Positions 20,195-44,749 are shown, counted from the stretch's first letter. The stretch: 64,000 bases of DNA from Selaginella moellendorffii (GCF_000143415.4 NW_003314364.1:236396-300395), one strand, 5' to 3'. Notes: generated by a model not told the origin, from the sequence alone. Translations and numbers: made by a program.

Positions 20195-20244
20195 TGTAAG
20201 CCACAAATTTTTCCTTTCCAATTTGCCAGCTTATCTCATCTATG
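20195..20244 (-). repeat. Terminus of an LTR of the same family as 2983-4063
   Basis: TGTAAGCCACAAATTTTTCCTTTCCAATTTGCCAGCTTA matches 2983 onward, then runs into the gap. Confidence 0.85.
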
Positions 20245-20344
20245 NNNNNNNNNNNNNNNNNNNNNNNNNNNNNNNNNNNNNNNNNNNNNNNNNNNNNNNN
20301 NNNNNNNNNNNNNNNNNNNNNNNNNNNNNNNNNNNNNNNNNNNN
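20245..20344. other. Assembly gap (100 N)
   Basis: Run of N. Confidence 1.
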
Positions 20345-25263: not shown

Positions 25264-25393
25264 CATTTGAACTGGCATAAAGTGTCTAATATGCACTAGA
25301 TGCTAATTTCTCACAAAGAAAAGAGAAATTTAGCCAGAAAGATGGGAAAAACACAAAGAATGTTGTGAAAATCACTTAGTAGGATGTGGATAT

Positions 25394-26819
25394 TGTGAGA
25401 CACAAAATCCCTAGGCCCTAAAGTGGAGCCGGAAGGGTGCCATGTGGTAGTGGCCGAAGCGAAAGCCAAACAAATGTAACACGTTTGAACTAAAAAGCTT
25501 TGACTTGAAAGGTCAAAAGCAAGAGTGGAACTCTCAACAAAGTGCTCGAAGAAAGAGCATGAAATAAGTGAGGCTCTAAAAAGGGACCCAAAAAGACCGA
25601 GACGGAGTCCGAGATGGAGTTCGAGACGGAGTCTGAGATGGAGTCCGAGATGGAGTCCAAGATGGAGTCCGAGATGGACTGAGACGGAGTCCGAGATGGA
25701 GTCCGAGATGGACCGAGACGGAGTCCGAGATGGACCCGAGATGGAGTCCGAGATGGACCCGAGATGGAGTCCGAGTTGGACCCAAGATGGAGTCCGAGAT
25801 GGACCCGAGATGGAGTCCGAGATGGAGTCCAAGATGGACCCGAGATGGAATCGAAGATGGAGTCCAAGAAGGACCCGAGATGGAGTCTGAGGTCGAGACC
25901 GAGACCGGGACCGAGACCAAAATCGGGACCGAGACCAAGACCGAGGCCGAGGCCGAGTCCGAGCCCGAGCCCAAGTCCGAGTCCGAGTCCAAGTCCCAGT
26001 CCCAGTTCGAGTCCAAGTCCAAGTCCGAGTCCTAGTCCGAGTTTGAGTTCGAGTCTGAGAGGGTGAAAGCCCAAAGCATTCGTCTCCCAAACCCTGGGGG
26101 GTTTGGTGAACTCCAAAAGTATAGTGAGGGGGAGGACTGTAGTGGAGCCAGTTTGGCCAGGAAAGGCCAGTTTGGCCCAGGAAGGCTGTACCCAGTGTTG
26201 GGTGATGAGCTGCCTACTGGGAAGTCTAACACTAGAGTGAATACAGACCGACAAGCGGGGTAGCTTGGTGAAGTGTTCAAGAGCTGGCTCTAGTTCCCTT
26301 AGGAGATCGATTGGCCGATGCTCCCAGTCCAAGTGTGGGTGGCACTACCTACTTGGATACCTAGTGTGGCTCAACGGAACCTCGCTCTAAGCCTATGGCT
26401 AGAGCACCTAAAGGCGGAAGGCGGGGAGAGTACCCATGAGGCCCACGTAGGGCCACAGTGTTCCGAAATGTTGTCCCAAAGTCCCAGACTGTGAAAAGGA
26501 AGAGGAGTGGCCCTCTAGTGTTGTGACCAAGGACACAGTCACACAATGAGGAAGTCCTAGAGGACAATGGGACTTAGTGGTTGGTCCCATAGGCCTTGGT
26601 CCAGTGGCAGTGTTGGCAAACTCAGCCAAGGATAAAAAGGGACTTGGTGGGGACTGGAACGGAGATATTGGGGAAGGTTATTCCCCATGTTTGCAAGCAT
26701 CCTAAGGATGGTAAGGAGTGGATTTGGGACGACCACTCATGGACGAATAGCCCAGTCTTGGAGAGATGGGATTGCAATGCAGGTGGTGTTAGACCACCGA
26801 TGTGACCAAGGTGAATGAG
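25394..26819 (+). repeat. LTR (same family as 37400-38986), truncated at its right by the MULE-like element; contains (CCGAGATGGAGT)n-type tract 25595-26060
   Basis: Starts TGTGAGACACAAAATCCCTAGG, preceded by a purine-rich PPT-like AGTAGGATGTGGATAT. Confidence 0.85.
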
Positions 26820-27020
26820 GAGCCCGGGTAGGTTTTGAGCTCATGAGCTCACGAGCTGAGCTCATGAGCTGAGCTCACGGCTTCTCAAACACAAGAAAAA
26901 CATTGGTTCGTCCCGAACCAACATCTTTCCATTCTTCAAATTTTGATTTAATCTATATTTCCAAGTAAATTCGACTAATAAAATACAAATATAAATATAG
27001 ATCCGAACACTAAAAGCAAT

Positions 27021-30000
27021 CTAAAAACACTTCTCAAGCTCCGCAACTGTAAGGCTTGCCTGGTGGATGTGATGGTCGATCTTAGGATCTTGGTTTAGTT
27101 CCTGCATAAAAATGTAATAGATGTGCTTGCAGGCTAAATATACCTTTCCCCTGTTCTCCCGCTGTGTAAAATCTGGACAGGTACAGGATGGATTTTCGCA
27201 GATTTTAACAATGTAGCTCGTACCCTTTGATGACTCAGTCACAATAATAAACTCCTTAGCCATAGCACTGATGTAGTTTGTCTTTGTGATTGTGCACTTT
27301 AGCTCTTTTGCCAACTTGATCTTCTCTTGTGCACCTTTCGAAATGGAAGACCTGTATTGTATAGCCTTCCCATTCCTAGCTGGTCGTGTATGCCGGTCTA
27401 GTGTTGATATTGGTGGCATAGCAGTACTAATAGCAACATTTGAGGAAGTCTTTAGCTTGAAACCTGCTCTCTCCAGACTTTCAATCTCTTCTTTCAAAAG
27501 ATTGCAGCTTCGCTCAACTGGCCACTCCTCTGGCACAGAATCTGGCTTCAAAATAATTGAGCTGTGGATCCTGCTTGTATGAGTAACATCAGTCCCACAA
27601 CAGTAGATCCAGCTTGACTGGCGGCCCTTCACTCCTAGATCTCGACAGCCCCAGAAACATGGCACTGCTGAAGAACTTGAACCTGAGCGCACAAAAGCGA
27701 GACACTGACCTCGACTCCCAATCATTCCAGAGCAACGTGCATTGCTCTTGGCACTGACTCTTCGAATTGCCCAGTTGATACGAGAAACTGGCTCGCGAGA
27801 AATAACCTTTTCAACCTCTGGCACTGGACTTACTTGTGTAACAACTGGCACCTCCTCCACTCCATGTTCCTTAGTTCTTTTCCGGTGTCGTGGAACAGAA
27901 TGGTAGTCAAACTCTGGACGGTGAGAGCTAGAAGGAGTGATGTTTGACCCATCAAATGTCTGTCGACGCTTCATACGGGCTGTTCTCATGTCCCCAAGTG
28001 GCTCATAACTTGATTTCATAGGAGTTCCAGCAACAACTTCCTCCACCATCTTGGACATTGACCCTGCTGCTGGTGTTGTCCTTCTACCAACCCGCTCTTG
28101 AAGCCTGTCTAAGTTCGGACCTGTACCAGCAAACCTTGCTTCCTGTGCAGCCAAAGCTTTTGATGATTGCTCAAGAGATCTAGTGAGGTCGGAGAGTGTA
28201 GCTTCATAGAGGGACACTTTTCCCTTCCCTGCTTCGGAAGCTCTCCAACTCCAATGTTTGCTCTCAGAGAGATTAATTGTTGGTGTAAGTGCAATATCAT
28301 CAAGTGGTTGATCCTACAAAAAATGCAACATTTGAATGTGACAAGAAAGAAAATGAGAGAAAGCTTACATGGAGAGTATAATGACCCCACTGAAACATTC
28401 GAACTTCCCACCATGCAAGCCAGCATTCCATTTGTGGAAGGTTTTCAATTGGCACTTTGTCTCCTTCACGCCACCATATGCGCATTTCATTTGCCTTTGC
28501 CTCGTGCTCCTCTTTAGTTGGTGCATCCATCCATTTCCGACAAAGCTGCTTGAACTCGTGATGGAAGGTAGACTTGATGCATCGGCAATGTTCATTGACG
28601 CTCTTTGCCCAATGAAACTCACAACTCTTCTCTCTACCTTGTAATGGCTGACTTTTATCACCTCCGAATACTTGTCGTACAGCCAACCAGTTAGCACCAG
28701 CTGCATCTGCCATGAAACCACGGAAGTTGGGTTTCTTCCCGGTTCGCTGTTCAACAACCTCGGACATACATGTCCAAAAGATGGTTTGTGCTTGAAAATC
28801 TTGAACTTTGAATTCGGCTATAGCTATAGTCAAATTGCACTGCAACCTATAAAAGGAATGGTTATAATGTAAATTGGTATAGATCCTTAAAAAATGAAAA
28901 GCCACTTACTTGTGATCATAAACATGAGCTCCCATTGTTGACCAGCCTGAAACTCGTTCCATATGGTCAAAATGGATCCAGGAATTAGCTAAATCCCCAT
29001 CTCCATCCATATCCATTCGTTGTACAAGGTCCACACCAGAAGCAGGACCAAGGGTAGACATCTTAAAGATGAAAGGGCGTTGATTGTTCGAAGTCACTTG
29101 GCCAACGAATAAGCTCCCATGAATAAACTCATAGGGACATTTTCTCTTTAGCTCCAAAATCCCATCCAATCCAGATTGAAGCTTTCCATCTCGCCCTTCT
29201 CGCATCCAGTTCTTTATTCTACAAAAAAAAAGAGTGTTATTAGTGATAAAGTAGAGTTAAGTGTTAATTTTATACCTGTTTAAATTTGTCATAGGTTCTA
29301 TATTTCGAAGTAGGTCCTTCAAGCTATTCTCCGTGAACTCTTTTTGGCTATCAGATTGTAACAACATGTCCACCACATAGTCCTTTAGTATAGACTGTTG
29401 AACACACTTTGGAGTTGCTGCACTTTTCTTCCTAGCCTCTGTAGTAACAGCAGTCTTCAAATTGCGAAAAGAATCACGGCGGATTCCTTCCTCAATTGCG
29501 TGTTGGTGGTATCCAATATGCACTGCTGCTCTGCCTAAACATCCATCCCGTGGAAGAAAATAATACATTTTCGCATCGCAACATGCTTGACACACAGGTG
29601 TTGCCCCGCATTTGCGACATCTAAATCCTGTAGCAACTTCATCACGCCTAGGGGGATTGATTGCTGAGCCTTCAAAGAAACACATATTCTTGCCATGATC
29701 AGAAATGCATTTCTCAGCGACACACTGAAGCTGTCCACCGCAATGGACTATGGACACAGATCCATCGAAATGAGAGAAGTGGGTCGTCTTTACTCTGCAC
29801 CAATTATGTGGATCAAGACGTGTTTCCATACCCCTTTTCCTGCTTGACGAACTTGCTGGTGGAAACTCGAAGAATATATTCCCATTATAGGAAGAAGGAA
29901 GCTCCTCACCTCTCATGTACTGGAACTCCTTCAATTCCAACCGTAATGATCGAGATTGCCGAAATGCCTTATCCACCACTTCAAAAACTGGTCCAGAAGG

Positions 30001-30405
30001 AACACACCTACTTGTCTGGGAAGCTATGTCAGGAAGCTCATCTTCTTCATTTTCGTCACTGGAGAGAATAATAACTTCATCCTTCACTCTTTGCACAGTT
30101 GGCTGTGAAACTGATGCGCTCTCCTCTCCTCGCTTCGGAGATCCTGTAACTAGAATCTCTTGACCTGTACATCTATCAAGATCCCATTGAATCCCATTCT
30201 CTCCCACACCACTGTCGAGAAGAATGGATTTTTCTATCTGATTACCCTTATCACGACATACATTCTCCAAACTAACTGATCCTGGCTTCAGCTTGAATCT
30301 TCTGCAGAGGAAGGTCTCTCCTATAACACTCCTAGAGAAAACAATTGGAGGCTCTTGATCGAACTTCAAATAGAATTCTCTCATATCTTCTCCTTGCTCG
30401 AGCAC
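27021..30405 (-). CDS. MULE-type DDE transposase: N-terminal GCM/WRKY-like Zn domain, DDE core, C-terminal SWIM finger; at least 4 exons, apparently open
   Basis: HCGGQLQC...CRKCG...CDAKMYY...VHIGYHQH; WIHFDH; FMADAAGA; KSCEFHW (CxxH); TINLSESKH; PSCTCPDF...ACKHIYY (SWIM). Introns near 29225-29275, 28849-28908 and 28314-28367. True start not resolved. Confidence 0.88.
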
Positions 30406-30874
30406 TTAGAAAAAAATTTGGGGAGAAACTGACAAGAAAGAACAAAGATATTCTTCTGTATTGTGAGCATTAATTAGCTATGTCCTTGCAAAGGACAAGT
30501 TAATTATTTTAACAAAATATACAACCGTTTAGAATCTAGAGAGATATGAGAATCTTAAAGAGCCGCCCATATTAATTGTATAATTGATTGTGAGAGGAAT
30601 AATAATGTTGAAATGAATGTGGTTATGAGTGAGAAGCGCCAATCAATCACAAAAGTTGTAGCATTGATTTTTTGTTCTCCCTCTCATCTCCATGCTCTCT
30701 TCCCTTCAAGAGAGTTTCATTCTTTTGTGACAAGTGAGAGAGACTCAAGCTCGAAAAGGTTGGTTCGTGCGCGGTTTTTTCGCGCGCTTGAGCAGGGAAG
30801 GGCGAGAGAAAGGCGCTTCAATCAAGAAATGTGCTTCAAGACGCTCCTCAAACAAGGTATGCTTCCTTGAGAAG

Positions 30875-31396
30875 GTCGGTTCGCGTGCGAACCGACGTCT
30901 CCTCACTTTCTTTCTTCCATTAGAAGTTTCTATTTTCTCAACTTTTGTTTTCTCTTGAGGGATAGAGATGTCGGTTCTTGTGCGAACCGACATCTCCTAG
31001 CATTCTATTTCATTTTCTATTTAGCTTTTTGCCCATCTCTACCTCGTTTTTTTTTTTTTTTCCTTGTTGAAGGGGTGGGAAAGATCGGTTCGCGCGCGAA
31101 CCGACGTCTCCCCACCTTTATTTTTTCTAGAAGCGAGCTTTCTTGATTTTTTTCATGTTTCTAGTGGTGAGATTTCTATATTTTAGAAAACAGAGAGAGA
31201 TTGAAATGTCGGTTCTTGTGCGAACCGACATCTTCAAGGTTTTTTTTTTTATTTCATTGACTTGATGGGGCATTTCATGTGAAAATTAGAGGGTGGAAGA
31301 TGTCGGTTCTTGCGCGAACCGACCTCTCCCGTATTCTTGTTGTGTTTTTCCTTTTTCTTGAGAGGTAGGGTGAGGTCAGTTCTCGCGCGAACCAAC
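30875..31396. promoter_or_regulatory. Six copies of the palindrome GTCGGTTC-N6-GAACCGAC in the bidirectional intergenic region
   Basis: Copies start at 30875, 30970, 31084, 31208, 31302 and 31375. Confidence 0.85.
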
Positions 31397-31545
31397 CTCT
31401 CCCAGTGACTTATGTTTTTTTCCTTTGCATTTCTTGTAGTTTACAATCTATTTTTCACATCTTTTACTTACAAACTTTTCTTGTGAGAGCAGATATAAAT
31501 CAAACTTGACTGCTTGAAACTTCCAAAAAGGGACTTGAACTTCAA

Positions 31546-34500
31546 ATGCCACAGGTTTGCTTTACATTACAAGTTAGATGTTTTAATAGTTTTGCTTTTT
31601 ATTTTAGAGGAAGCGCCGAGGCCAACCTCAATGGTCTCGATCTCCAGGAAAAGGCAGCCGCCTTGATCGCTGTGGGCTTGGCCGATTGAGTGGAGATTCA
31701 TCTCAAGTATCTAATGAAGTTTCGGCTAGTCATGCTGGAGGCAACGATGAGTATAACAATGACGTGGATGTTGAGATGAACACTCAAATCGATGTTGGTG
31801 TTATTGAGGCTGTTGGTACTGGTGTTCCTGAGGCTGCGGGTACTGGTGGTGGGGTACTTGCATCTGATGTTGGCGGTGGTGGGGGTGCTATGCCTTCGGT
31901 TGCTGAGGCTGCTCGCGGCCAGGTCAATGAACCAGCTGAGGACGTTATTGGTAGCGTTGTAGGTGGATCTACTACAGAGGCTACTGGGGGCATGGTAGCT
32001 GCTCCTACTGCTCCTCAGGCTGGTGGTGCAGGGGGAGCTAATGGTGGTGAGGGATTATGCATGCATGATTCTGACACCATCTTGAATGATCGTGTTCGGG
32101 ACACAATTATCCAAGCTCAAGAACGGACAGTCAGTAAAGTGTTACAGGAAATGGCGTGGAATGGCCCTCATCGATTTCTAGTTCCTTTGTGCCGATTGGT
32201 TCAAAGCCATTGGGTGCGCTCAGCTTACGACCTCAACATGGCTATCTACAGCTCCTTTGCCGAGGTCGGGTTTGGGAGCACAGCTGGTACCTTCATCGTT
32301 TCACCAACTTTCCCTGGAACCGGCCGGACAGAGTCAGTGACTACTGAACTTGAGGAAAAATGGGATCCTATATGGCTGCGAAAGTCTCGTGAGTTTGATG
32401 GATTCTTAGGACAACATGTGGAGACAGCAGGGTTCATTGGAAAGCTCTTTTGGGTGATCGATGGAAACCATAGGTGGCTGGCATTTTGGAAGTGCATTCA
32501 AGAGAAGTTCCGAGATGACGAAGAACGACACATTAGTGTTCCAGTCACACTTGTCGAACCAATGACTCGGGAGCACACTGTGAAGCTCAACATGGCATGC
32601 CATAAGATCAACATGTAAGAATTTATTTTTTGTAAACTTAGCTAATATCGTGTTTTTGCAGGCTAAACCAATTTGCGTTTCAAGCTCATACATTGGTACA
32701 TGACATTGAGCACCTTCGGTTTATGGGCATGCTCTCGCTAGAGGAGGTCCAAACGTTGTACAATCGTGAGGTATTTGAAGCAATTCGAGTGAAGCTAGGA
32801 GCTAGGAAAGGCCAAGAATTGCAGACTTGGTACCAACTGCCACTTGATTTTCTAGTTGCTGTCTGGGCGAAGGTAAATTATTATTGAAGTATGTATCAAC
32901 TTACATAATGTTTCTTGCAGCCCATAATCAAAGGAGAAAGAGCGTCATTCTTTAAAAATGCTCGAGGGGACGAGCAGCAGAAGGAGATGGAGTGGCATGC
33001 GATTGAGCAGCGAATTTTGAATACGAAGAGAACAAAGGTGAAAAAGTTGCTCTCGATTGCAGACATACGACGCGGGCAGGAATGGCTTGATAGCATTGCC
33101 GAGATTTGTTCTCGCGTTCGTAAGTTCTTATAAAATTTGTGAAACATTTCATAACTCTTTGTGTGTGTAGGAACTGATAAAGCACCGGAGGAACTCATTT
33201 ACAACATCTCTAAGAGTAAAATGTCCTTTGCTGAACAAAGTGTCTGCTTGGAACTTCTCAACACTTGGCTGCGAAATAACGAAAAACGCTGCGAGATAAG
33301 GATGGAGAAGGTGATGAAGGAGAAGGCGTACATTTCTCAGAGTATTGCCGCTGGTGAGGAGATGCTACAAGTCTGGGATGAGAAGTTTCTTTCCAGCACC
33401 CGCACAGGTATCACTCTCGAAGAATATATTCGTGCTTGTCTTGCGGAGCTAGGGAATGGTTGGCTTCCACGTGGTGGGACGAGTTCGGCTGAGTTCAAGA
33501 ACCAACCAGGACAACCATTTCTTGCGAGGCGCATGGTTTACAGGTATTTTTTCAATTCTCATTTATATATTGGTATTTATATTTTTGTTTTACTTTGTAG
33601 ATATTTAAAATATAGCCCCGGCGCACCGGTATACACAACCGGTGTTTTGCAGAAGCTCCTGACTAGAGGCAAGAAGCTTGGGATGTATGAGCCAGAGTTC
33701 TACTGTCCTTGTACACATGAGAGGGAGCTATGCCCGTGGTACCTTGAACTCGTGGAGCAGATGCCAACATCGGACTTCGAGCTAGATCTCTACCTTGAAT
33801 GTCATCCAGGTTCACTTGAAACTCAGCACTTAGCTAGGAAATATTAACCTTGAGTTATATTCTTATTTTCCAGAGGCTCTTTCTGACTGTGATAACGACA
33901 TTGTTGAAGTTCAACAACTAAACCTAGAAGTCAGCACTCAGGAAACCATGCCAAATCCAAATACTGTTGAACCAGAGGAAATTGTACAGGAAATTCCAGC
34001 ACAAGAGATTCCAGTACCTGCTCCTCGCAACCCCCGAAGGGGCCGTCATGAAACCTTTCATGAGAGTAAGGACTTTGATTTGGAACATTCTTTTATTCAT
34101 TCTTGACTTCACTTTTTTTTTTATAGATGTTGCAGAGAGCAGCCATCAGTCTTTTCGGCGGACTAAGACATTCTTCCCATCCCTCCCTACGGCTACAGAT
34201 GACGACCTAGAAGAGCTCTCCTCTGCAGCGATGCATAAACAGGTTAGTAAGCATGAATTTTATCTTCAACTTTTAGTTCTAATAATTGATTTTCAGGTTC
34301 GCCCTCTATCCCCAACGGCCAGTGTTGGGGAAGTTGCTATTCTCATTGGGGATTACACACAGCTTTTAGATGCTACTAGTCGGGAGCTCTACATGCTTGA
34401 TCGGTGGATCCATGGTTTGGGTCAGCTCACACCTTATGGGAAGATCGATTTCATCTTTTTTGATCTTCCCGATGGGATGGCACCACCACAGGGGGATACT

Positions 34501-35395
34501 CCGTCATGGAATGTGTTGCAGGCCCAACACATTTCCCAAGCCTTAAAGGTTGCGAGCAGCTTCATGACATACGAGGGTGTGGTTGTCATGATCCTTCCTC
34601 GCTCTCTAATGTGGGAAGGCCTTCTCGCACACTTGGCTGACAACGATGATGGATTTGTTGAGTTTTCATCTGGCTGCCTTCTTTCGAGTATGGCGGTGGA
34701 CACAAAAGGCACTAGCAGGCAGACGCGAAAGGTGTGTGACTTCTTTATCTATAAATTAACTCTATTCTATTTTTTTTTTCCAGATTTATTCCTGGAACTA
34801 CCATGCTCTATGCCACATTGGGAACCGGCGTAATGCCACACGAGCTGACGAGCGTGCTGCTCTTGCTTTACCAGGATATGACAGCTCTACAGACATCATC
34901 CCAAATGTGATTGACTCGGACGTTCTTCACCCAGCGTTCCCTGGTTATCGACATCGTTCGGTCACGGCCATGCAAATCTTGTTGGAGTTATTTTGTCCGC
35001 CAAAGGGGATTGTGCTTGATGCTACAGCAGGATTTGGATCAATGGTGCAGGCAGCAAAAGAGACAGGCCGAGCGGTTTTTGCACTTGAGAAGGAGGGTGC
35101 CTTTGAGGACATTCTTAGGAGATTTTGCGACAGGTGATGTTAGTGCTTGAAATAATCTATAATATTTATTCTCAAATGTTTCTATTTTATTAGGTCTACA
35201 CTTATCACACACAGTGTTTCAGTCCACACGCTTGATCTTGATGATATGGATGATCATATGGACCAAAGTCAATTCCACTTACCTATTTATGCTGAACGTA
35301 TGGCACAACATTACATACAACACGAGCCTATAGTGAAGGAGCATTCCACTATACCCATTTCTACTTTTCTGGATATGGAAGCAGAAGAAGATTGA
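31546..35395 (+). CDS. Spliced cargo gene: ParB/Srx-like domain + beta-class N4/N6 DNA methyltransferase-like domain
   Basis: ATG 31546 (MPQ|RKRR), WVIDGNHRWLAF (32451), ILIGDYTQLL, IDFIFFDLPDG (34462), ALKVASSFMTYEGVVVM, HPAFPG...ILLELFCPPKGIVLDATAGFGSMVQAAKETGRAVFALEKE (~34930-35095), end FLDMEAEED* at 35395. Checked ~47-60 bp introns join exons in frame. Confidence 0.8.
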
Positions 35396-35673
35396 ATATA
35401 TTCTGATTTTAATATAAATTATATTGTTTAATATATTATTTTCTTTTTTTGTAGACTAAAAGATTAGTTCATGTCGAACCAATAATCTACATGAGCTTAT
35501 GGAATACCTTAAACACCTAGATTTTATGTTAAAAATTCTTGGTTCAGGACGAACTAAGGTAGTGCCATTAAACTTTCGCTAGTTAGGGGATTGTATTGAC
35601 TTCCGTTGACTTTCGTTGACTTTCATTGACTTGAGCTCAGCTCGTGAGCTCAGCTCAAAAACTACCCAGCCCC

Positions 35674-38600
35674 GTTCAGTTCCATCCATGCCTTAGCAAG
35701 TATTCACAGGGATGAACCTACCCAATAACTTAGGGAGTGGTTCTTCAATCTGGGCATGGTCACCTTATAATCCCACACACCGATAGGCCTTGATATGCCC
35801 ATCACTAAGCTTGCCAAAATCCCATTTTTGGCTTTGTTTAAATTGGGTAAACGGATTCCTCCCGTCTCCACAACCTTGGACGTTTGGATGGCATATCCTA
35901 TCCATCATTCGCAAGGGATTTAGTCCCTTGGGCCTTATTTATTGCCCTCGTGACACTAAACACCACCTTTTGGTGTTCCAGAGTGTTTGGGTGTCCTAAT
36001 GATGATCTCTTTGACAATGAGCATTTCCTTTTTCGACATTGACTCTCTATATCGCAACATAAACAATTTATCCCTCGTAAGGGTATATCTAACTTCCTTA
36101 TGCCATTAAGAAGTCTTGGGTAGCTACTTTTTACCCGTTTAACCAATTATCTTGCACCGCTTGCTTAGTTGCCCCATAGTTGTCAAGTCCTACAACTCAT
36201 TGCTTGGTGCTTCCACACCTCCATCATTATCTAGGTCACCACACTCCAACCACATGCCTTCCAACTTAGGCTATGCCATTCCCTTGGCAAGGGGTTCTCA
36301 TGAACCCATCAACATAACTTCAAGGTATCTCACTTTGGCACATTTGGTATCTCCACACCAATGGCTCCACAAGCCTACCTCTATGACACTTCTTACTTGT
36401 GTCTAGGTCTTTGCCAAGATTAAAGCAATCATTTTTCATGCCAACTACTGCACCATAATGTTCACACACAACTCTATGCCGAAATTGCTTTTTTTTTGGG
36501 GAACACCTTTCCCACGACTTTAGTATAGCACATTCTGCCATCGATGAGATACCCTTTGTTCTCATCCTTGGATCTTATGATCCCCCCCCCCCCCCATCTT
36601 TTATGGGGTACAACATACCTTAGTTCAAATGCTTCCATCAATCCTTTAGGATTATTCCTTGACTCTATTTGAGTCATCCAGCTTTTTGGACTTTGTCATC
36701 CAACGACCCATGAGGTCCTACCTTTGAGGTGCCAACTCACTGGAATACAACTTCTTGTATTCAAGTCCTACTCACAAGGACCATCTTTGCAAGTATTACT
36801 CCGACACTTGATTTGTTCTCTTGGGGCAACCTTTTGCCCCTTATGACCACTTGTCTATGTGATGAGAATACCAACTCATCTTTTGAGTACACCCCCAACT
36901 CTTTGGGTTTTCCAGCATTTATTAAAGGTAGCTCTGGCTACCATTTCAAGGACTTGTATCCTTCTCCGTATTTGACCTCCCGTGGTCATTCCTTCTAGTC
37001 TCACATTCACGAGCACCAACCTCAACTATATGAGGATAATTTTGTGACTCCTTTATTGCTTTGGAGTCTCTATCTTTCCTGTGATCCCAACTATAGTTGT
37101 TTACCACAACTACATTAGTCAGTTGGCTACGTCAAACACTCATCTGGATCTCATCCTCAACTCTTTGAGGAAACCCTTATACTGTTCCCAAGATCCCAAA
37201 GTCATTCCCTTACTGGCCCCTTTTCTACCCACCACATCGTACCCAAGTTCACGCATGAACTTGAGTGGAGAGCCATGTCCTCTCAACATGCTACTCCTCA
37301 AGGATAGGCCCACTCCTAGGACCTTCTGATGCCAATATCAATGGTGATATACTTGAGCACCAATAAAAGTCGGACTATGGAACAGCTCCGATACCAAGTT
37401 GTAAGTGATGAAATTTTCTATTCTACTTTAGTCACTTAACCGCACCTCCAACCACTTGGAGGAGTCTCATTCACAACCTCCATAAGTCCCATTTAGGACT
37501 TGGGGCTTGTTATCCCTAAGAATGGCATCTATGCCACTCAACCTTTGCACTTGGCACAAGTGCTCCACGTGTCTGATCCCATGACTGACACCCCAAGATA
37601 CCACTAACATATCAGCCCGTTACGCTAGACCATCCCCATTCACCTTGGTCACATCAGTGGTCCAACACCACCTGCATTACAATCCCATCTCTCCAAGACT
37701 GGGCCATCCGTCCATGAGTGGTCATCCCTGATCCACTCCTTAGCATCCTTAGGATGCCCATAGACATGGGAAATAGCCTTCCCCAATATCTCCTTTCCAA
37801 TCCACACCAAGTCCCTTCCTGTCCATGGCTATGTTCGCCAACACTGCCACTAGATCGAGGCCCATAGGCTCGACCTCTAAGTCCCACTGTCCTTTGGGAC
37901 CTCCTCACTATGTGACCATATCCATGGTCACTGCACTAGAGGGTTGCTCCTCTTCCTTTTCACCGTCTGGGACTTTGGGAAAACATTTCGGAACACCGTG
38001 ACGCGAGCCTCGTGGGTACTCTCCCCGCCTTCTGCCTTTGGGTGCTCTAGCTGTGGGCTTAGAGTGAGGTTCCATTGAGCCACACCAAGTATCCAAGTAG
38101 GTAGTGCCACCCACACTTGGACTAAGAGCATCGGCCAGTCGATCTCCCAGGGGAACTAGAGCCGGCTCTTGAACACTTCACTAAGCTACCTCGCTTGTCA
38201 ATCCGTGTTCACTCTAGTCTTGGACTTCCCAATGGGCACCTCATCACCCAACACTGGGTACAGCCCTCCTGGGCCAAACTAGCCTTTCCTGGCCAAATTC
38301 GCTCCACTACAGTCCTCCCCCTACTATACTTTTGGAGCTCACCAAAAGCTGGGAGACAAACGCTTTGGGCTTTCACCCTCTTAGACTCGAACTCAGACTC
38401 GGACTTAGACTCAGACTCAGACTCGGACTCGGACTCGGGCTCGGGCTTGGTCTCGGCCTCAGCCTCGGTCTCGGTCTCGGTTTCGGTCTCAGTCTCGGTC
38501 CCGGTCTCGGTCCCGACCTCGGACTCCATCTCGAGTCCTTCTCGGACTCCATCTCGGATTCCATCTCGGGTCCATCTCGGACTCCATCTCGGGTCCATCT

Positions 38601-38986
38601 CAGACTCCATCTTGGGTCCATCTCGGACTCCATCTCGGGTCCATCTCGAACTCCATCTCAGGTCCATCTCGAACTCCATCTCAGGTCCATCTCGGACTCC
38701 GTCTCGGGTCCATCTCAGACTCCACCTCGGCCTCCAACTCGTGTCCATCTTGGACTCTTCCATGTGTCATGTGTTGGTCCTTTTGGAGCCCTTTTTGGAG
38801 CCTCGCTTATTGCTTGTTTCGTGCTTATTCCTCGAGCACTTTGTTGGGAGTTCCACTCCCGCTCTTGACCTTTCAAGTCGGAGCTTTCATTCCAAACATG
38901 TTACGCTCGTTTGGCTTTCACTTTGGCCACTACCATGTGGCACCCTTTCGGCTCCACTTTGGGGCCTAGGGATTTTGTGTCTCACA
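35674..38986 (-). mobile_element. LTR retrotransposon 5' part: LTR 37400-38986, PBS 37385-37396, degenerate internal region
   Basis: Minus strand TGTGAGAC...CTTACA-ACT-TGGTATCGGAGC. Repeat tract 38380-38755. No intact gag recognised. Confidence 0.85.
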
Positions 38987-39173
38987 TGGTGGATGCATTA
39001 ATTACTCAAGTTTTATTCCACTATCATGATCGTCCAAAGGCTGGTCATTTTGGGGGGAAGAAGACATATGAGTTGATTAAGTGCAACTTTTATTGGAGGA
39101 ATATAAAGGTTGATTGGAGGAATATAAAGGTTGATATCCTCAAGTATTATAAATTATACAAGCTTTGTCAATG
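38987..39173 (+). pseudogene. Gypsy integrase Zn-finger fragment (left half of the Sola target)
   Basis: HYHDRPKAGHFGGKKTYELIKCNFYW...LCQ. Confidence 0.85.
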
Positions 39174-39615
39174 AAGCTCTATTTCGTTAAAGTGGGAATT
39201 GTCATTATCCCACTTGTAAAATAAGGTTTCCAAACCTTTATATAGTATATAAATATAACAAAATTCAACTGCATTGAGGCACATGCCATTTTATTTTAAA
39301 CAAGGAAATGTCTACTCAATCACTTCTCCTCCCCTTGCCACTGCTTCACCTCTCTCTTCTCCTTGTCATCGTCGTCCAATTTCTTTCCATCCTTTTAATA
39401 TTGGCTCAGTTGCTCCGAGTCTAGGTGGAGCCCAAGTCCCCATTCAATCTTTACTTTCCCCTTATTAATAAAACAACTTCGCAGACTTCCAATAACATGC
39501 TGTAACACTTCTAGTATAATGCAAATCCTCTCAAAGAATTGTCTTTTAATATTAATACAATGGCATGGAACCCCATGCCATAATAAGTTACATTTTTAAA
39601 TAAATACATGCCATC

Positions 39616-40500
39616 TCAGACTGTTATTTTTTGCCTCCAACGCCTATACAATAATCTTGGAATTTCATCACTCTCCACACTATCAGGATTTAAACCCAAT
39701 AGTAATGCCATCTCTTCTCTAATACGTCCACGCTCATGTTCAGTGGTCGAAGAACCCATCCGGTTGAGCAGATTATGGAGATGCGGATAGTGCTTGGCTA
39801 GACAATATACATGCCATAAATGATGACTGGTGTTTGTCCGATCAAATGGCTTCTGATATACCATTCCATCTGCCATTTGGTTGATTTTTGCAGCCACCTC
39901 CTGGACTGGCCGGTTCTCTATCACCATCGCTTCAAGCCGTTTTGCAAGGTCCCCCAGAACATACGGTTTCTTCTCCCTAGTTTCCATACTGCAAGAGATG
40001 GGGTGCACTGCATATGTGTGCGTGTTCATTGCAGTTTTAATCGGCGAGTCATCGATGATGAGGATTTCACTTGACCTAGCAGTCCGGTTCATCACTACAG
40101 CCTCTGGCTTGACGAAGATGGGCTTGCTACCCCTCACATGGACCATAGTCAAGCAATCCTCCTGCGTTAGGAGAAAGTCAAATGGTAATATTACTCACGT
40201 CTAATCGTGCATCATCTGTAGCAACGTTAATGCATTGTGGCGCATCATGGATGTCCAAACTCCCAATTGCAAATTGAACCCGGCCCTCTGTTTTAAGTGT
40301 CGCATGGTCATTATTAGATCCCGCAGTTTCTCCCGTGTGATTAATGTGAATCTGTCTTTTTTGACCAACTTGCGACTGCAGGCTTTGGAGGGTGCAGTGA
40401 CATTCGAGGACGAGCCACGCTCATGGGAGAAAAGGACACCGTTCAGATCAAAAACGATACAGTACTTTCGCCGTGACTCTGAAATGAAATGCGTCAGCAT
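39616..40500 (-). CDS. FCP1/NIF-like HAD phosphatase domain (TAG at 40201-40203 in this copy)
   Basis: CIVFDLNGVL, LGVWTSMMRHNA, FLLTQEDC, ILIIDDSPIKT. The copy at 20345-20990 has CAG at the stop position. Confidence 0.75.
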
Positions 40501-41350: not shown

Positions 41351-44300
41351 TTATTTACCTGATGGTTTGTCTTGTATGACCTTCCTCCGCTGCTCTTTGG
41401 CCACCTCAGGCTGGCCATCGTCGTCATCATCGTCATCGTCGTTATTGTGATCGTCACCATTGTGAGGACCATCCAAGTCCTCTTCATCCTCCTCTTCTTC
41501 GTCCTCCTCTTCTTTGTCCTCCTCTTCGTCCTTCTGCTCTTCCTGCTCATTATCTTTCTCTGGCTCCTCATCCCCCTCCTGCATTTCTTCCATAGGCTGC
41601 TTAGGCTGGATGGCTTGTTTTTCCAGGACCATCTTGGGAAAATCATCTGGCCGAGTCTCCATCTCAAAATACAAGACATCCATAGCCTATTTCAGTGCTT
41701 GACCTAGGACCGTATCCTCACCCGACTGTCTTAACATGGTTTCTGCACGTTCTTGCACCCTTCGAAGACGACGAGATGAGAAAAACGTGGCCCTGACTTG
41801 AAAAGCATCCCTCATCCATTGTACCTCTCCATTGAGATTGGGGAAGGGGAGTCCACCATAGGAATCTGAGTCAGGAGGTGGTGACTGGCTCCTTTCACTC
41901 AGCCCTTGATCTGCAATGAATGGCATGAGCACACACGCCATAACCGCGAGGCATTACCTATCATCTTTTCGTTGCCCTTCTTCCTTTTCGAATCAAACGC
42001 CTCTGATCCCGACGACTGTCCAACGTGCTTTCGCTTTTTATGACCACTGTCAGTTTGAGCTTGACTGGTGCTTGCCTGTTTTGCCTTTGAAGAAGTGTCT
42101 CCTGCAAGGAATGGCATGAGACCACACGCCATTGCAAATATAATTTGTACCTCCTTTTTTCCTATTGCTTGTCTGTTTGTCCTTCTTCGACGCGCCACCA
42201 GTGCGCTTTTCAGTCCTCGTGTCTGAATATTCACAACGATCTATAATCAAAATGGCGTGAGGCCTCACGTGACCTTACCTTGTGCAGGTTGTGAGCTCGG
42301 CCCAACATGGGTATCTTCAACAGTAGCTGTTAACGCCGTTTCAGCATCTGGGGGTGGCCACGCTCCTGCATACAGAGCTTGTGAGATAACATTTAAACTT
42401 AAAGTGCGTACTCACCAGGTTCGCAGAGAAGATACTGTTTTTCTTTGGCAACTGTAATTATATGCTCCATTGAAGTCACCTCTTCAATGGAGTTTGTCAC
42501 TGCAACACACGGGACACCCTTGAGTAGTGCGGCTCGAAAGAATAGTCTGCCGCAGTTGTACTCGACAACGCATTTGCCCTTGGTGTCACCCGCTATTGCG
42601 TTGAAGACCCAGCTGAGCATTTCCCATGCTGCACCTGGAGCTTTCTTTGGATTCGAAAGCTCCATAGCCGTCTTCAGTTCCTTAGGCACGGGTAAATTGA
42701 CCTCCCTCAGATCAATTCGATCGGCCTTGTCGAACGAAGCTGGGAAGTCACTCCAGTCCCACTCTGCTACAGGACCAATAACAAGGGCGAGTGTGAAGAT
42801 GCGAACATTCGTCGGTATCTTCTTCTTAGCCATTATCCCATGTATCTCCCGCATCTCCTTGCCTTTCAACCGAGCCTTCACCTCGTTCAAGGCCTTCCAG
42901 AACTTGTGATAGGATTCGGAGTCGTAGATCATATAGTGGACTGAAGATTCCACCTCCGCAAGTCCCACCATTAAGTCAATGATGGAGCTGACTTCGTCTG
43001 CATGAGTGATCTCCTCGTTTGTGAAGTCCATCACACAAAAGATGTTCTTGACCTGCTTTGACAAGGCGTTGAGCTTCAAATCATTGGGCTTCCGGCCGTC
43101 CTCCACACCCATTGAGTTTAGCAACTCCCCGTCATGGTACCTCCTCAGCACATCTACCCATTTGTCAAAAACAACTTTTGTCGTGAGTAGAATGTTATGG
43201 ATGCTGAGTGTGTCATTGAACCCTAGTGTTTTCGAGAGAAGACTCGAGAATTCCTGCAATGGAAATGGCGTGAGGCCACATGCTATGCCACATGCAACGA
43301 GGCTTACCTGCCAGGCGCTAGTTGCTAGTGCACGTCCTTGTCCTGGTTTTTGTGGCTTCTTCAGTTGAACCCAGAGCTTCCGTGTTCGTGCCAATGTCTC
43401 GTGCAGACCCGATTTGTAGCACGTTTCTTGCTTGACATTCTGCGCGTGGGAGATGGATATGATAGATCGGAGGGGCGAGTTGCCTTTTATCAGGCGGACA
43501 ACTCTTGTCTTGAAGACTTTCTTCACCTCCTCGCCCACCATAATATCCAGAACTATCTCTTGCATCGCTAAGCTAGAATGCTGCCCGGAGACGGCATAGA
43601 ACCGGATGTTCTGATCGTCCAACACCTTCCTATTGATCAAGTTTGGAAACCTCATCTCGCCCTTCATTGTTTGGTAGTAGGGGATCACGTATGCGATGTT
43701 GGGTGTTACTGGACTTGCCAGCATCTTCTGCTTCAGTTTCTCCACCCACTCATCAGATACTAGCCTGTGGTTGTATTTGCTTTGGATGTCAATACGGCTC
43801 ACGTCGATTGTATATACTTTGTTGGAATAGTAACAAGTACTATTATCTGCGACGATTTTTGCTGCCTCTTCTTGCTCTTTCTGCTCTTTGCGGCTCTTCT
43901 TTTTGGTGGGTGTAGTGTTCGAACCCGAGGCAATGGCATCACCGAGTAGCTTCTTTTTTGGAGCAGCAGAGTCGGATGTCGGCTTGAGCTTGACCACCCT
44001 TTTCTGCTTCGGGGTAGTTTCCAGATCGACCCCCTTCCCCTTCGCTTCGCGAACTGGAGGCACTCTCAACGGCTCAATGTTGGAATATAGTTTTTGAACA
44101 TCGCCGTAGGTGAGGTTCGTGGATTCCATGTGATCTTCATAGACCCGCAGCGTCTTTGAAATTGTGGGCCTCCTGGACAACCTCTCCCTAGCTCCCTCTA
44201 GGAATTCCTCATAGCCGTTGCCCCCCTCCGGGAAGCCGCTAGGATGTGCAAGGTGGATCTTGAAGGCGGACGCTGTCTCTACCACAAGTGCCAGTCCATA

Positions 44301-44749
44301 TTCTTGCATGGAACTGCATGGAGTGTCTGTCACTTGGATGAGGATCCCCATGCATTCTTTTCTCCCACCATCTGTGTTGTACAGCATCAGATCCTCGCCT
44401 TCCATCCCGAAAGTCCAACTGGTGAGCTCCTCCCCCTTCTCTGCATCCACATTGACAGTGGCTGGAAGAAGAACGCAATTCCTCGCCTGTTCAGAAATGC
44501 ACAACAATTAGAGCTGACAGATGAAAAGCTAGCAGCTGGAAATAACGTGAGGCCACATGCCATTCACCACTGCATCAGATGTCTTGAGGCTGCATCCTAA
44601 GATGGCGTGAGGCTACACGCCATCTGTAACCGGACTGCACTCGAGAGCCCAATCGGTGCATGCCAATGTTGCTACTGAATGGCATGTGGCCTCATGCCAT
44701 TTTCTACTTGGCCTAAAAGACTTACCATTTGAAGCCGAATGGAGGCCAT
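41351..44749 (-). CDS. Spliced cargo gene: ParB/Srx-like domain + degenerate methyltransferase-like domain + basic and acidic tracts; may continue into the FCP1-like exon
   Basis: 702-aa ORF 42399-44507: YTIDVSRIDIQSKYNHRLVSDEWVEKLKQKM...FYAVSGQHSSLA and C-terminal KGKCVVEYNCGRLFFRAALLKGVPCVAV. Probable start MASIRLQM at 44749; TAG at 41687; D/E-rich tract 41420-41590. Confidence 0.65.

What the first reader, a model, noticed from the sequence alone, without database searches (positions are those of the whole stretch)
31546..35395. Apparently intact ParB + beta-class N4/N6 DNA methyltransferase-like gene inside a plant MULE
Seen: motifs appear in beta-class order: ILIGDYTQLL (III-like), IDFIFFDLPDG (IV; DPPY replaced by DLPD), FMTYEGVVVM (VI-like), then HP...LLELFCPPKGIVLDATAGFGSMVQAAKETGRAVFALE (motif I, SAM binding). 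The N-terminal half has IDGNHR, typical of ParB/Srx. The gene has short plant introns, an NLS-like RKRR start and a C-terminal FLDMEAEED. Known: this fold makes 4mC/6mA in bacteria and is not part of the standard plant 5mC machinery. Inference: a horizontally derived enzyme domesticated by a transposon. The altered motif IV leaves catalytic activity open; it could be a SAM-binding reader.
Basis: partly seen in the sequence, partly recalled or inferred. Interest (0 to 1): 0.9.

Follow-up and report, generated by a model that had tools for sequence, protein, structure and literature searches.

The report
Transposon gene with methyltransferase-like domain
A Mutator-like jumping gene of the lycophyte Selaginella carries, beside its transposase, an intact, spliced and selectively maintained second gene whose product has a bacterial-type DNA amino-methyltransferase fold with an altered catalytic motif; related elements in ferns carry it too, and I found no description of it in the literature searched.

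Summary
At 31546-35395 (+) an 11-exon, 1100-codon reading frame without stops can be assembled. All ten introns are GT..AG and 47-64 nt long. Four introns are confirmed by transcript contigs, and a fifth junction matches a RefSeq model.

The genome is Selaginella moellendorffii. The gene lies inside an 8.85-kb MULE (26820-35673) with ~50-bp TIRs. Sibling copies have 9-bp target duplications. The gene is divergently paired with the transposase.

The C-terminal 260 residues form a beta-class N6A/N4C DNA methyltransferase fold. Evidence: HMM hits to motifs X-I-II, whole-domain hhalign, and an AlphaFold model of a paralogue matching CcrM, M.BceJIV, RsrI and PvuII. Motif IV is DLPD, and D-h-P-x across the family, while the motif I, II and X residues are kept.

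The ParB/Srx assignment (IDGNHR) is only weakly supported and points to the DGQHR/DndB type.

Between Selaginella subfamilies dN/dS is 0.08-0.19 in the structured domains. The same transposase-plus-ORF2 pair, with three shared intron positions, occurs in Adiantum ferns. This is therefore an old, integral accessory gene, not a recently captured fragment.

Catalytic activity and a horizontal origin remain unshown. Other first-stage notes of this scan flagged the same family elsewhere in this genome.

The parts
26820..35673 (.). Whole MULE-like element (8.85 kb): TIR, transposase gene (-), palindrome array, ORF2 (+), TIR
   Evidence: Similarity to sibling copies L002, L003, L010 and L001 starts at about 26818-26884 and ends at 35643-35673. 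Terminal motifs recur at the ends of all copies. No target duplication can be read for this copy, because other repeats flank it.
26820..26880 (+). Left terminal inverted repeat (GAGCCCGGGTAGGTTTTGAGCTC..., rich in GAGCTC)
   Evidence: It pairs with 35632-35667 at 90-96%. The same terminus is found in L002, L003 and L010 and in the inverted partial copy ending at about 25258-25265 (motif matched at 25258).
35626..35673 (-). Right terminal inverted repeat (reverse complement GGGGCTGGGTAGTTTTTGAGCTGAGCTC...)
   Evidence: In L003 the two termini are flanked by CTTAGAGAC / CTTAGAAAC (8 of 9). In L002 they are flanked by AGCCTGGAG / AGCCCAGAG (7 of 9).
27021..30405 (-). Multi-exon transposase gene (ORF pieces 29257-30405, 28906-29205, 28300-28905, 27021-28217)
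   Evidence: ORFs, with GTAAGT donors at the piece ends. In the core piece, 25 of 30 language-model neighbours are PF10551 MULE, but there is no Pfam hit at E<0.1. A CxC...CxH SWIM-like motif is visible in the last piece. The gene lies upstream of ORF2 on the opposite strand in L002, L003, L004, L009, L010 and L012 and in fern locus L015.
30873..31398 (.). Array of six ~30-bp palindromes (GAGATGTCGGTTC-N6-GAACCGACATCTC) between the divergent genes
   Evidence: TCGGTTC-N6-GAACCGA gives 6 matches in the window, all here, against 0.09 expected. Subfamily 2 has five copies of AAGATCGGTTC-N6-GAACCGATCTT at the same place.
31546..35395 (+). ORF2, 11 exons: 31546-31554, 31608-32614, 32662-32872, 32921-33119, 33171-33543, 33601-33809, 33874-34065, 34127-34242, 34297-34731, 34784-35133, 35194-35395 (1100 aa)
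   Evidence: Gene model. Introns 2, 3, 4 and 7 are spliced in transcript contigs. The exon 9/10 junction is in RefSeq P0077. Exon lengths in subfamily 2 differ only by multiples of three.
31608..32057 (+). Basic N-terminus (RKRRGQPQW) followed by a Gly/Ala/Val-rich low-complexity region (aa 4-153)
   Evidence: Translation. The basic motif is kept in subfamily 2 as KKRPGQPQW. dN/dS is 0.7, so this part is weakly constrained.
32151..32614 (+). ParB/Srx-like (DGQHR-type) domain, aa ~185-339, with IDGNHR at 32457-32474
   Evidence: Weak hits only: TIGR03187 E 0.007-0.009, phrog_1033 E 0.009-0.011, Atlas 0.93. In 36 homologues N123 is invariant, and G122, R125 and W129 are near-invariant. dN/dS is 0.10.
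32662..33809 (+). Conserved middle region (aa 339-670, exons 3-6); no match to any known family
   Evidence: dN/dS is 0.08, the lowest in the protein. No Pfam, PHROG or PDB match. Two intron positions here are shared with the fern gene.
34297..35133 (+). Beta-class N6/N4 amino-methyltransferase-like domain (aa 773-1034, exons 9 and 10)
   Evidence: hhalign against phage methylases: probability 96.8-98.3% over 201-207 columns. PF01555 E 2e-4, phrog_3008 E 4e-6, NF010253 E 8e-6. 333 phage records match; all 25 listed rows that carry annotation lie under methylase genes. The AlphaFold model of paralogue P0046 with the family alignment matches CcrM at Foldseek E 1e-12.
34444..34476 (+). Motif IV region IDFIFFDLPDG (DLPD in place of DPPY)
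   Evidence: Aligned to tDPPY of the phage enzymes. Family-wide the motif is D-[LMVF]-P-[DTFIE].
34928..35089 (+). Motif X-like HPAFPGYRHRS, motif I VLDATAGFGSM and motif II VFALE
   Evidence: [RK]-S-P, G-x-G and the acidic residue after strand 2 are kept in Selaginella and the ferns; the metagenome lineage keeps the acidic residue but has EKSD and SSTGAS in place of the first two.

Best explanation
This is the second gene (ORF2) of an old lineage of Mutator-like DNA transposons. It is not a captured host fragment.

Shown:
- The gene is intact, spliced and transcribed at low level.
- It sits between the element's TIRs and is divergently paired with the transposase.
- It has been under purifying selection.
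- The pairing and three intron positions are shared with fern elements.
- Its C-terminal domain has the circularly permuted (beta-class) fold of bacterial and phage N6-adenine / N4-cytosine DNA methyltransferases.
- The cofactor-side motifs are kept: X ([RK]-S-P), I (G-x-G) and II (acidic residue).
- Motif IV is D-h-P-x instead of (D/N/S)PP(Y/F/W).

Inferred:
- The basic N-terminus takes the protein to the nucleus.
- The ParB/DGQHR-like domain and the strongly conserved middle region bind the element's own DNA. The best candidate site is the parS-like array of six palindromes in the bidirectional promoter.
- The methyltransferase-like domain binds S-adenosylmethionine.

My best guess is that the protein is a transposon-specific regulator, either a transposition helper or an anti-silencing factor. 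Its methyltransferase module works mainly as a SAM-dependent DNA-binding module rather than as an efficient canonical amino-methyltransferase. Rough odds: functional transposon accessory protein 0.85; binds SAM 0.6; still methylates DNA 0.35-0.4.
For: - Gene model and splice sites.
- Spliced transcript contigs. RefSeq junction.
- Element limits, TIRs and 9-bp TSDs in siblings.
- Conserved head-to-head pairing with the transposase in six Selaginella loci and in Adiantum nelumboides L015.
- Shared intron positions.
- dN/dS of the window copy against subfamily 2: 0.18 overall, ParB-like 0.10, middle 0.08, MT_N 0.15-0.19, MT_C 0.17-0.19. Exon length differences are multiples of three.
- The window copy has 0 stops; the six other copies projected onto the model have 1-21.
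- Methyltransferase homology.
- Fold: pLDDT 69.8, pTM 0.76. The 35 best Foldseek matches are all beta-class DNA amino-methyltransferases.
- Motif conservation across Selaginella subfamilies, ferns and metagenome contigs.
- Palindrome array, its statistics and its subfamily-specific variants.
Against: - No biochemical data exist.
- The Pfam match is below the gathering score (20-22 against 26.7 bits).
- The family profile finds no methyltransferase in PDB by sequence.
- The ParB assignment is weak, and the first fold model was poor (pLDDT 46).
- Nothing links the palindromes to ORF2 rather than to the transposase or to host factors.
- dS between subfamilies is saturated (0.9-2.7), so the dN/dS values are rough.
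- Expression is low: 2 reads in one true RNA run and 0 in another. The transcript contigs could come from a near-identical copy (G>A at 32570).
- The position of the aromatic residue in motif IV varies (D, T, F, I, E). That argues against canonical base flipping but cannot exclude activity.
Confidence: 0.6

Rival explanations
1. ORF2 is an active DNA N4-cytosine or N6-adenine methyltransferase with a non-canonical motif IV. It marks the element's own DNA, for example at or near the palindromes or TIRs. That could time transposition, as Dam methylation does for IS10/Tn5, or interfere with host 5mC silencing.
For: - The D and P of motif IV are invariant in every lineage seen, and one fern lineage has DVPF, close to DPPF.
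- Motifs X, I and II on the cofactor side are conserved.
- dN/dS of both halves of the domain is 0.15-0.19.
- The nearest folds are active enzymes: CcrM, M.BceJIV, RsrI, PvuII and rotifer N4CMT.
Against: - The second proline and the stacking aromatic residue of (D/N/S)PP(Y/F/W) are missing in Selaginella. The fourth position varies freely across the family.
- Motif I is degenerate in the metagenome lineage (SSTGAS).
- From my own knowledge, inactive relatives such as METTL14 are also under purifying selection.
Confidence: 0.37
2. The methyltransferase-like domain acts on another substrate (RNA or protein), or uses SAM for a reaction other than amino-group methylation of DNA.
For: - The motif IV consensus D-h-P-x-G is unlike that of DNA amino-methyltransferases.
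- The fold search also returns METTL3-METTL14, an RNA m6A enzyme, at E about 1e-8.
- Iyer et al. describe repeated shifts of acquired N6A methyltransferases to RNA in eukaryotes (PMC4738411).
Against: - The 35 best structural matches are all DNA enzymes.
- The domain is joined to a ParB/DGQHR-like domain, which in prokaryotes accompanies DNA-directed systems.
- No RNA-binding domain was detected.
Confidence: 0.1
3. The gene is a decaying passenger: a Pack-MULE-type captured fragment or an old horizontal acquisition without present function. The open frame of this copy would simply reflect a young insertion.
For: - Most copies are broken, with 1-21 stops.
- Within-subfamily dN/dS is 0.5-0.7 overall and about 1-2 in both halves of the MT domain for L003 against L004.
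- Expression is low.
- The catalytic motif is degenerate.
Against: - Between subfamilies dN/dS is 0.08-0.19 in all structured domains, and indels are in frame.
- Architecture, pairing with the transposase and three intron positions are conserved between Selaginella and ferns.
- No non-transposon parent gene was found.
- Broken copies and near-neutral change within a subfamily are what dead insertions of any transposon show.
Confidence: 0.04
4. The gene is a host gene, a domesticated former transposon gene, that merely lies next to transposon remains.
For: RefSeq annotates family members as ordinary 'uncharacterized protein LOC...' genes. P0046 lacks the ParB part in its model.
Against: - The window copy lies between the TIRs of a complete element.
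- The family has dozens of dispersed copies at 47-100% identity, most of them broken.
- Copies travel with the transposase.
Confidence: 0.03

Closest known systems
Prokaryotic and phage ParB-methyltransferase fusions (e.g. Bacillus cereus Bce_0392, cited in PMC5512222; Pfam ParBc + N6_N4_Mtase architecture, from my own knowledge)
   Same: Same domain order: ParB/Srx-type domain at the N-terminus and a beta-class N6/N4 amino-methyltransferase at the C-terminus. Both are carried by mobile DNA.
   Different: - The plant protein has about 430 extra conserved residues between the two domains.
- It has 10 spliceosomal introns, a basic N-terminus and an acidic tail.
- Its motif IV is D-h-P-x.
- It belongs to a eukaryotic DNA transposon.
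- No prokaryotic protein reached significance in the exhaustive search, which covered the ParB-like, middle and MT_N parts only.
Solved beta-class DNA amino-methyltransferases: CcrM (6pbd), M.BceJIV (8urk), M1.HpyAVI (5hfj), M.RsrI (1eg2), M.PvuII (1boo)
   Same: Same fold and motif order. Foldseek E 1e-12 to 1e-8, alignments of 232-302 columns against the 296-residue model, TM by target 0.5-0.75.
   Different: Sequence identity is 10-18%. Their DPPY/SPPY catalytic motif is not kept. They are stand-alone or restriction-modification/cell-cycle enzymes.
Eukaryotic N4-cytosine methyltransferases of prokaryotic type: bdelloid rotifer N4CMT (PMC8885841, PMC10406627; 8s9m) and Marchantia MpDN4MT1a/b (bioRxiv 10.1101/2021.02.12.428880)
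   Same: A prokaryote-type amino-methyltransferase in a eukaryote. The rotifer enzyme is among the fold matches (rank 22).
   Different: Those are single host genes reported to make 4mC. The rotifer enzyme is fused to a chromodomain. Neither is a transposon gene and neither has a ParB-like domain. I did not compare their motif IV here.
Transposon-borne methyltransferases: DNMT-carrying retrotransposons of dinoflagellates and charophytes (PMC5890265); the inactive methyltransferase domain of DIRS1 elements and the Dam-like genes near Trichomonas transposons (PMC4738411)
   Same: A mobile element carries a nucleic-acid methyltransferase-fold domain as an accessory function. In DIRS1 the catalytic residues are also degenerate.
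   Different: Those are retrotransposons carrying C5 or group-2 (PCIF1-like) domains, or a Dam type. Here a cut-and-paste MULE of vascular plants carries a beta-class domain plus a ParB-like domain.
Accessory genes of Mutator-like elements: mudrB of maize MuDR, VANC of Arabidopsis VANDAL21, ULP1-like protease of KI-MULEs (from my own knowledge, not checked here)
   Same: A second gene beside the transposase within the TIRs, specific to a lineage of MULEs and thought to help insertion or to counter silencing. VANC binds short motifs of its own element.
   Different: No sequence or fold relation. None has a methyltransferase or ParB-like domain.

Membership tests
Beta-class N6-adenine/N4-cytosine DNA methyltransferases (Pfam PF01555 N6_N4_Mtase) | Circularly permuted motif order: N-terminal GD segment, IV-VIII, target-recognition region, X, I, II | tested here: met
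   hhalign of the spliced domain against four phage enzymes aligns 201-207 columns from the GD segment and motif IV to motif II, probability 96.8-98.3%. The strand order of the paralogue model agrees.
Beta-class N6-adenine/N4-cytosine DNA methyltransferases (Pfam PF01555 N6_N4_Mtase) | Class I methyltransferase fold closest to solved beta-class enzymes | tested here: met
   By proxy. The model is of paralogue P0046:332-627, built with a family alignment that contains the window's exons 9 and 10 (pLDDT 69.8, pTM 0.76). The 35 best Foldseek PDB matches are all beta-class DNA amino-methyltransferases, best E 1e-12.
Beta-class N6-adenine/N4-cytosine DNA methyltransferases (Pfam PF01555 N6_N4_Mtase) | Score above the curated family threshold | tested here: not met
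   PF01555 scores 20.4-21.7 bits against a cutoff of 26.7; NF010253 scores 25.6 against 244. Only single exons could be scanned, so the two halves were never scored together.
Beta-class N6-adenine/N4-cytosine DNA methyltransferases (Pfam PF01555 N6_N4_Mtase) | Catalytic motif IV (D/N/S)-P-P-(Y/F/W/H) | tested here: not met
   DLPD in the window and subfamily 2, DMPD in P0046, DLPT/DVPF/DFPI in ferns, DMPE in the metagenome contigs. Only D and the second P are kept.
Beta-class N6-adenine/N4-cytosine DNA methyltransferases (Pfam PF01555 N6_N4_Mtase) | SAM-binding motif I (G-x-G loop after strand 1) and an acidic residue after strand 2 | tested here: met
   VLDATAGFGSM...VFALE aligns to VLDPFxGSGT...iGiE. 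Ferns have LELGAGTGP...LVID. Actual binding was not tested.
Beta-class N6-adenine/N4-cytosine DNA methyltransferases (Pfam PF01555 N6_N4_Mtase) | Transfers methyl groups to exocyclic amino groups of DNA | not testable with these tools
   Needs biochemistry or native-DNA modification calling.
ParB/Srx superfamily (DGQHR/DndB-like branch) | Strand followed by a D-G-x-H-R / GxxR motif at the start of a helix | tested here: met
   FWVIDGNHRWLAFW at 32448-32489. In 36 homologues N is invariant, and G, R and the following W are near-invariant.
ParB/Srx superfamily (DGQHR/DndB-like branch) | Significant profile match to a ParB, DGQHR or DndB model | tested here: inconclusive
   - TIGR03187: E 0.007-0.009 for the window, 4 of 36 members down to 4.6e-4; it is the only family hit by more than one member.
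- TIGR03233 DndB: 0.028. phrog_1033: 0.009-0.011.
- All are far below curated cutoffs.
- No hit for the family profile in PDB, Pfam or PADLOC.
ParB/Srx superfamily (DGQHR/DndB-like branch) | ParB/Srx alpha+beta fold | tested here: inconclusive
   The AlphaFold model of exon 2 with a shallow alignment has pLDDT 46.5 and is unusable.
Mutator-like elements (MULE, Mutator superfamily) | Terminal inverted repeats | tested here: met
   About 50-bp imperfect TIRs at 26820 and 35673, recurring at the ends of sibling copies.
Mutator-like elements (MULE, Mutator superfamily) | 9-11-bp target-site duplication | tested here: met
   Met in siblings: L003 CTTAGAGAC/CTTAGAAAC (8 of 9) and L002 AGCCTGGAG/AGCCCAGAG (7 of 9), read from the flanks. 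Not readable for the window copy, whose flanks are other repeats.
Mutator-like elements (MULE, Mutator superfamily) | MuDR/MULE-type DDE transposase | tested here: inconclusive
   No Pfam hit at E<0.1. For the core exon, 25 of 30 language-model neighbours carry PF10551 MULE at 0.87-0.91. A SWIM-like CxC...CxH motif is visible in ORF 27021-28217.
Pack-MULE (MULE carrying a captured host gene fragment) | The cargo is a fragment of a host gene that has a parent copy outside transposons | tested here: not met
   No homologue outside this transposon family was found. The cargo is a complete gene, constrained, and shared with fern elements together with the transposase.

The most novel reading that the evidence does not exclude
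A lineage of plant DNA transposons encodes its own active amino-methyltransferase with a new catalytic motif (D-h-P-x). A ParB-like module guides it to parS-like palindromes, where it writes 4mC or 6mA on the element. The mark would shield the element from the host's 5mC silencing or license transposition. That would mean transposon-driven 4mC/6mA in vascular plants.
Probability: 0.2. Interest if true: 0.9.

Novelty: new variant of a known kind. Interest (0 to 1): 0.62.

Why it matters
Transposons that bring their own chromatin or DNA-modification tools are rare. So far they are known mainly as retrotransposons carrying C5-methyltransferases. Here a cut-and-paste element of vascular plants has kept a ParB-like plus amino-methyltransferase-fold protein under selection, apparently since before lycophytes and ferns diverged, or across a transfer between them.

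If the protein is active, it offers a concrete, testable source of 4mC or 6mA in a vascular plant and a new catalytic motif. If it is inactive, it is a clear case of a methyltransferase fold reused as a DNA- or SAM-binding module by a selfish element. Either way it gives a handle on how MULEs regulate themselves, including a candidate protein-operator pair: ORF2 and the palindrome array.

It also shows that the public gene models of this family are systematically wrong. Most JGI models skip the ParB core and the SAM-binding exon.

Tried and rejected
- Long TIRs. I first took 25394-26821 / 37633-38986 for the element's long TIRs. Comparison with other loci showed a separate ~1.6-kb repeat that also sits inside other copies. 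The true ends are 26820 and 35673.
- Second ParB-like ORF. I looked for a link between ORF2 and the ORF at 42399-44507. BLASTP and both family profiles find nothing.
- PDB sequence searches. Exon 10, exon 2 and the profiles A2, A3 and A4 give no useful hit.
- Pfam. Exon 2, exon 9, the middle exons and the transposase pieces give nothing. PADLOC gives nothing. tblastn of the ParB piece against plasmids gives only E 2-5.
- Whole-protein alignment. I tried tiling exon fragments on gene-model backbones to obtain one alignment for the exhaustive search. MAFFT scattered the fragments, so the search was run with P0022:140-705 only, without exon 10.
- Read-through of exons 9 and 10. In the window the 52-nt intron shifts the frame. 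In L003, L004 and L011 the 54-nt intron holds two stops. The fold was therefore predicted on paralogue P0046.
- The P0046 locus could not be fetched.
- Literature. Four searches found no description of this family.

Full report
**What is there.** Between 31546 and 35395 on the + strand I assembled an 11-exon model of 3303 nt (1100 codons plus the stop) with no internal stop. The best database matches are all 'hypothetical proteins' of Selaginella moellendorffii, so the window comes from that lycophyte, whose introns are known to be short.

**Public gene models.** The roughly 60 public models of this family are fragmentary. Most JGI models skip residues 231-467, which hold the ParB-like core. 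They also skip most of exon 10, or read into intron 9.

**Expression and splicing.** Contigs of two runs (X1, X2) match the window at 99-100%. They skip exactly introns 2, 3, 4 and 7. Another contig runs through the part of exon 10 that the JGI models splice out. In true RNA raw reads the gene is barely seen: 2 reads in X13 and 0 in X14. One G>A difference at 32570 shows that the contigs may come from a near-identical copy or allele. RefSeq protein XP_024519602 (P0077), identical to the window over 131 residues, carries the exon 9/10 junction as modelled. The 9-nt first exon and the last exon have no RNA support.

**The element.**
- Comparison with eight other Selaginella loci fetched through the gene models shows that similarity begins at about 26820 and ends at 35673.
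- Both ends carry an imperfect ~50-bp inverted repeat rich in GAGCTC, and it recurs at the ends of the other copies.
- In two siblings the termini are flanked by 9-bp duplications: L003 8 of 9 and L002 7 of 9.
- The window copy is flanked by other repeats, so no duplication can be read there.
- The 1.4-1.6-kb inverted repeats that first looked like long TIRs are a separate repeat. It also interrupts other copies of the element.
- On the minus strand, 27021-30405 holds a multi-exon transposase.
- Pfam does not recognise the transposase. However, 25 of 30 language-model neighbours of its core exon are MULE transposases, and its last exon has a SWIM-like CxC...CxH motif.
- Together with the 9-bp duplications this supports a divergent Mutator-like element.
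- Transposase and ORF2 are head to head in six Selaginella loci.

**The methyltransferase-like domain.**
- Exon 10 alone matches PF01555 (E 2e-4, below threshold), phrog_3008 (4e-6), phrog_67 (3e-5) and NF010253 (8e-6) over motifs X-I-II.
- By tblastn exon 10 touches 333 phage records. All 25 listed rows that carry annotation lie under methylase genes.
- 28 of its 30 language-model neighbours are N6_N4_Mtase clusters.
- Exon 9 alone matches nothing.
- The spliced domain, aligned as a small profile against four phage enzymes, gives hhalign probability 96.8-98.3% over 201-207 columns. IGDY...IDFIFFDLPDG is placed on the phage i.GD...iDli.tDPPY.
- The window's domain is split by a 52-nt intron, so I folded the Selaginella paralogue P0046:332-627 (40% and 55% identical to exons 9 and 10). 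The family alignment used contains the window's exons.
- That model has pLDDT 69.8 and pTM 0.76. Its 35 best PDB matches are all beta-class DNA amino-methyltransferases: CcrM, M.BceJIV, M1.HpyAVI, TTHA0409, RsrI, MboIIA, rotifer N4CMT and PvuII, with E 1e-12 to 1e-8.
- The fold and the permuted motif order are therefore established.

**Catalytic and cofactor motifs.** Motif IV is DLPD here. Across the family it reads D-[LMVF]-P-[DTFIE], so only the D and one P of DPPY survive, and both are invariant. The G-x-G of motif I, the acidic residue after strand 2 and an [RK]-S-P counterpart of the xKP of motif X are kept in Selaginella and the ferns. The metagenome lineage keeps the acidic residue but has EKSD and SSTGAS instead. 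That pattern speaks for retained SAM binding and leaves catalysis open.

**The N-terminal half.** IDGNHR sits in a block that is conserved in 36 homologues: N is invariant and G, R and W are near-invariant. Support for ParB/Srx is weak but points one way:
- TIGR03187 DGQHR is the only family hit by several members (4 of 36, best E 4.6e-4; the window scores 0.007-0.009).
- Single hits go to DndB (0.028) and to a phage ParB-like family (0.009-0.011).
- Language-model neighbours are named ParB/sulfiredoxin.
- Against that, the family profile finds nothing in PDB, Pfam or PADLOC, and the only fold model was unusable.

I call this domain ParB/DGQHR-like, tentatively. The 330-residue middle region is the most constrained part of the protein and matches nothing known.

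**Selection.**
- A second Selaginella subfamily (L003, L004, L011) is 50-62% identical in protein.
- It keeps every exon, with length differences of 0, 3, 24, 45, 69 or 87 nt in the two well-preserved copies (L003, L004), all multiples of three.
- Nei-Gojobori dN/dS of the window copy against this subfamily is 0.18 overall: 0.10 for the ParB-like domain, 0.08 for the middle, 0.15-0.19 for each half of the methyltransferase domain, 0.37-0.40 for the linker and about 0.7 for the low-complexity N-terminus. dS is saturated, so the values are rough.
- Within subfamilies the ratio is 0.5-1, as expected for dead insertions.
- The window copy has no stop. The six other copies projected onto the model have 1-21.

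**Range.**
- An exhaustive phmmer search of 1.84 billion representatives with P0022:140-705 gave 112 hits. That query covers the ParB-like, middle and N-terminal methyltransferase parts.
- Apart from Selaginella, the named hits are from the ferns Adiantum nelumboides and A. capillus-veneris. The rest are unnamed assemblies.
- Fern protein P0103 has the whole architecture.
- In its locus L015 a homologue of the same transposase (30-45% identity) lies upstream on the opposite strand.
- Three intron positions are shared between the fern and Selaginella genes.
- Metagenome contigs L013 and L014, of unknown origin, encode the same domain order in several exons.
- No prokaryotic protein reached significance. 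A bacterial or phage origin is plausible from the distribution of the fold and of ParB-methylase fusions (PMC5512222, PMC4738411), but it is not shown.

**A possible partner site.** Between the two genes lie six ~30-bp palindromes with the core TCGGTTC-N6-GAACCGA. There are 6 matches in the window, all at 30876-31395, against 0.09 expected. Subfamily 2 has five copies at the same place, with the same core and different flanks. The fern locus has other palindromes there. ParB proteins bind palindromic sites, so ORF2 is a candidate binder. This is inference only.

**Literature and verdict.** Four full-text searches found no description of this family. The review of eukaryotic adenine methyltransferases does not mention Selaginella.

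Two other first-stage notes of this scan describe the same family on other pieces of this genome.

Noticed in passing
window 25394-26817 and 37400-38986: Two inverted copies (80-90%) of a ~1.6-kb repeat with internal short tandem repeats flank the MULE. The same repeat sits inside other copies of the MULE (L009 12170-15556, L012 6716-8416) and continues to 35687 on the right side (matched in L011). It looks like a separate transposon family that mimics long TIRs.
   Followed up: partly
window 23041-25259: An inverted partial copy (81-83%) of the same MULE's transposase 3' part, with its own terminus at about 25258. A similar inverted transposase fragment follows ORF2 in L002 (13607-14579).
   Followed up: partly
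window 20345-21427 and 39168-40261: A 98-99% identical inverted repeat pair 18 kb apart, next to a run of N at about 20240-20340. It contains a 178-aa ORF (39616-40152). The same sequence adjoins MULE copies in L004 and L012.
   Followed up: no
window 42399-44507 (-): A single-exon 702-aa ORF that another note calls a second ParB-like protein. It has a SGQHS motif but no detectable similarity to ORF2 by BLASTP or to the family profiles, and no Pfam, PHROG or NCBIfam hit.
   Followed up: partly
window 45935-48880 (+): A 981-aa ORF with a strong DUF7869 match (E 4e-42), presumably the transposase of the neighbouring Sola-like element.
   Followed up: no
L013 4145-7716 and L014 (JGI metagenome contigs): An unknown, apparently eukaryotic organism (exons called as separate genes, G+C 0.40-0.46) encodes the same ParB-like ... 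MT_N ... MT_C order. Its motif IV is ADMPED and its motif I is SSTGAS. No transposase was detected on the 12-kb contig.
   Followed up: partly
L015 7844-7871 and 8818-8841 (Adiantum nelumboides): Two palindromes of a different sequence (CCCTTTCGC...GCGAAAGGG) lie between the fern transposase and its ORF2. This hints that an intergenic palindrome is a conserved feature of the lineage.
   Followed up: no
Selaginella gene models P0001-P0066: JGI v1 models of this family repeatedly use an internal GT in exon 10 and skip the SAM-binding motif. Several add an alternative last exon ending ...MSLWNTLNT. Whether these reflect real isoforms is unknown.
   Followed up: no
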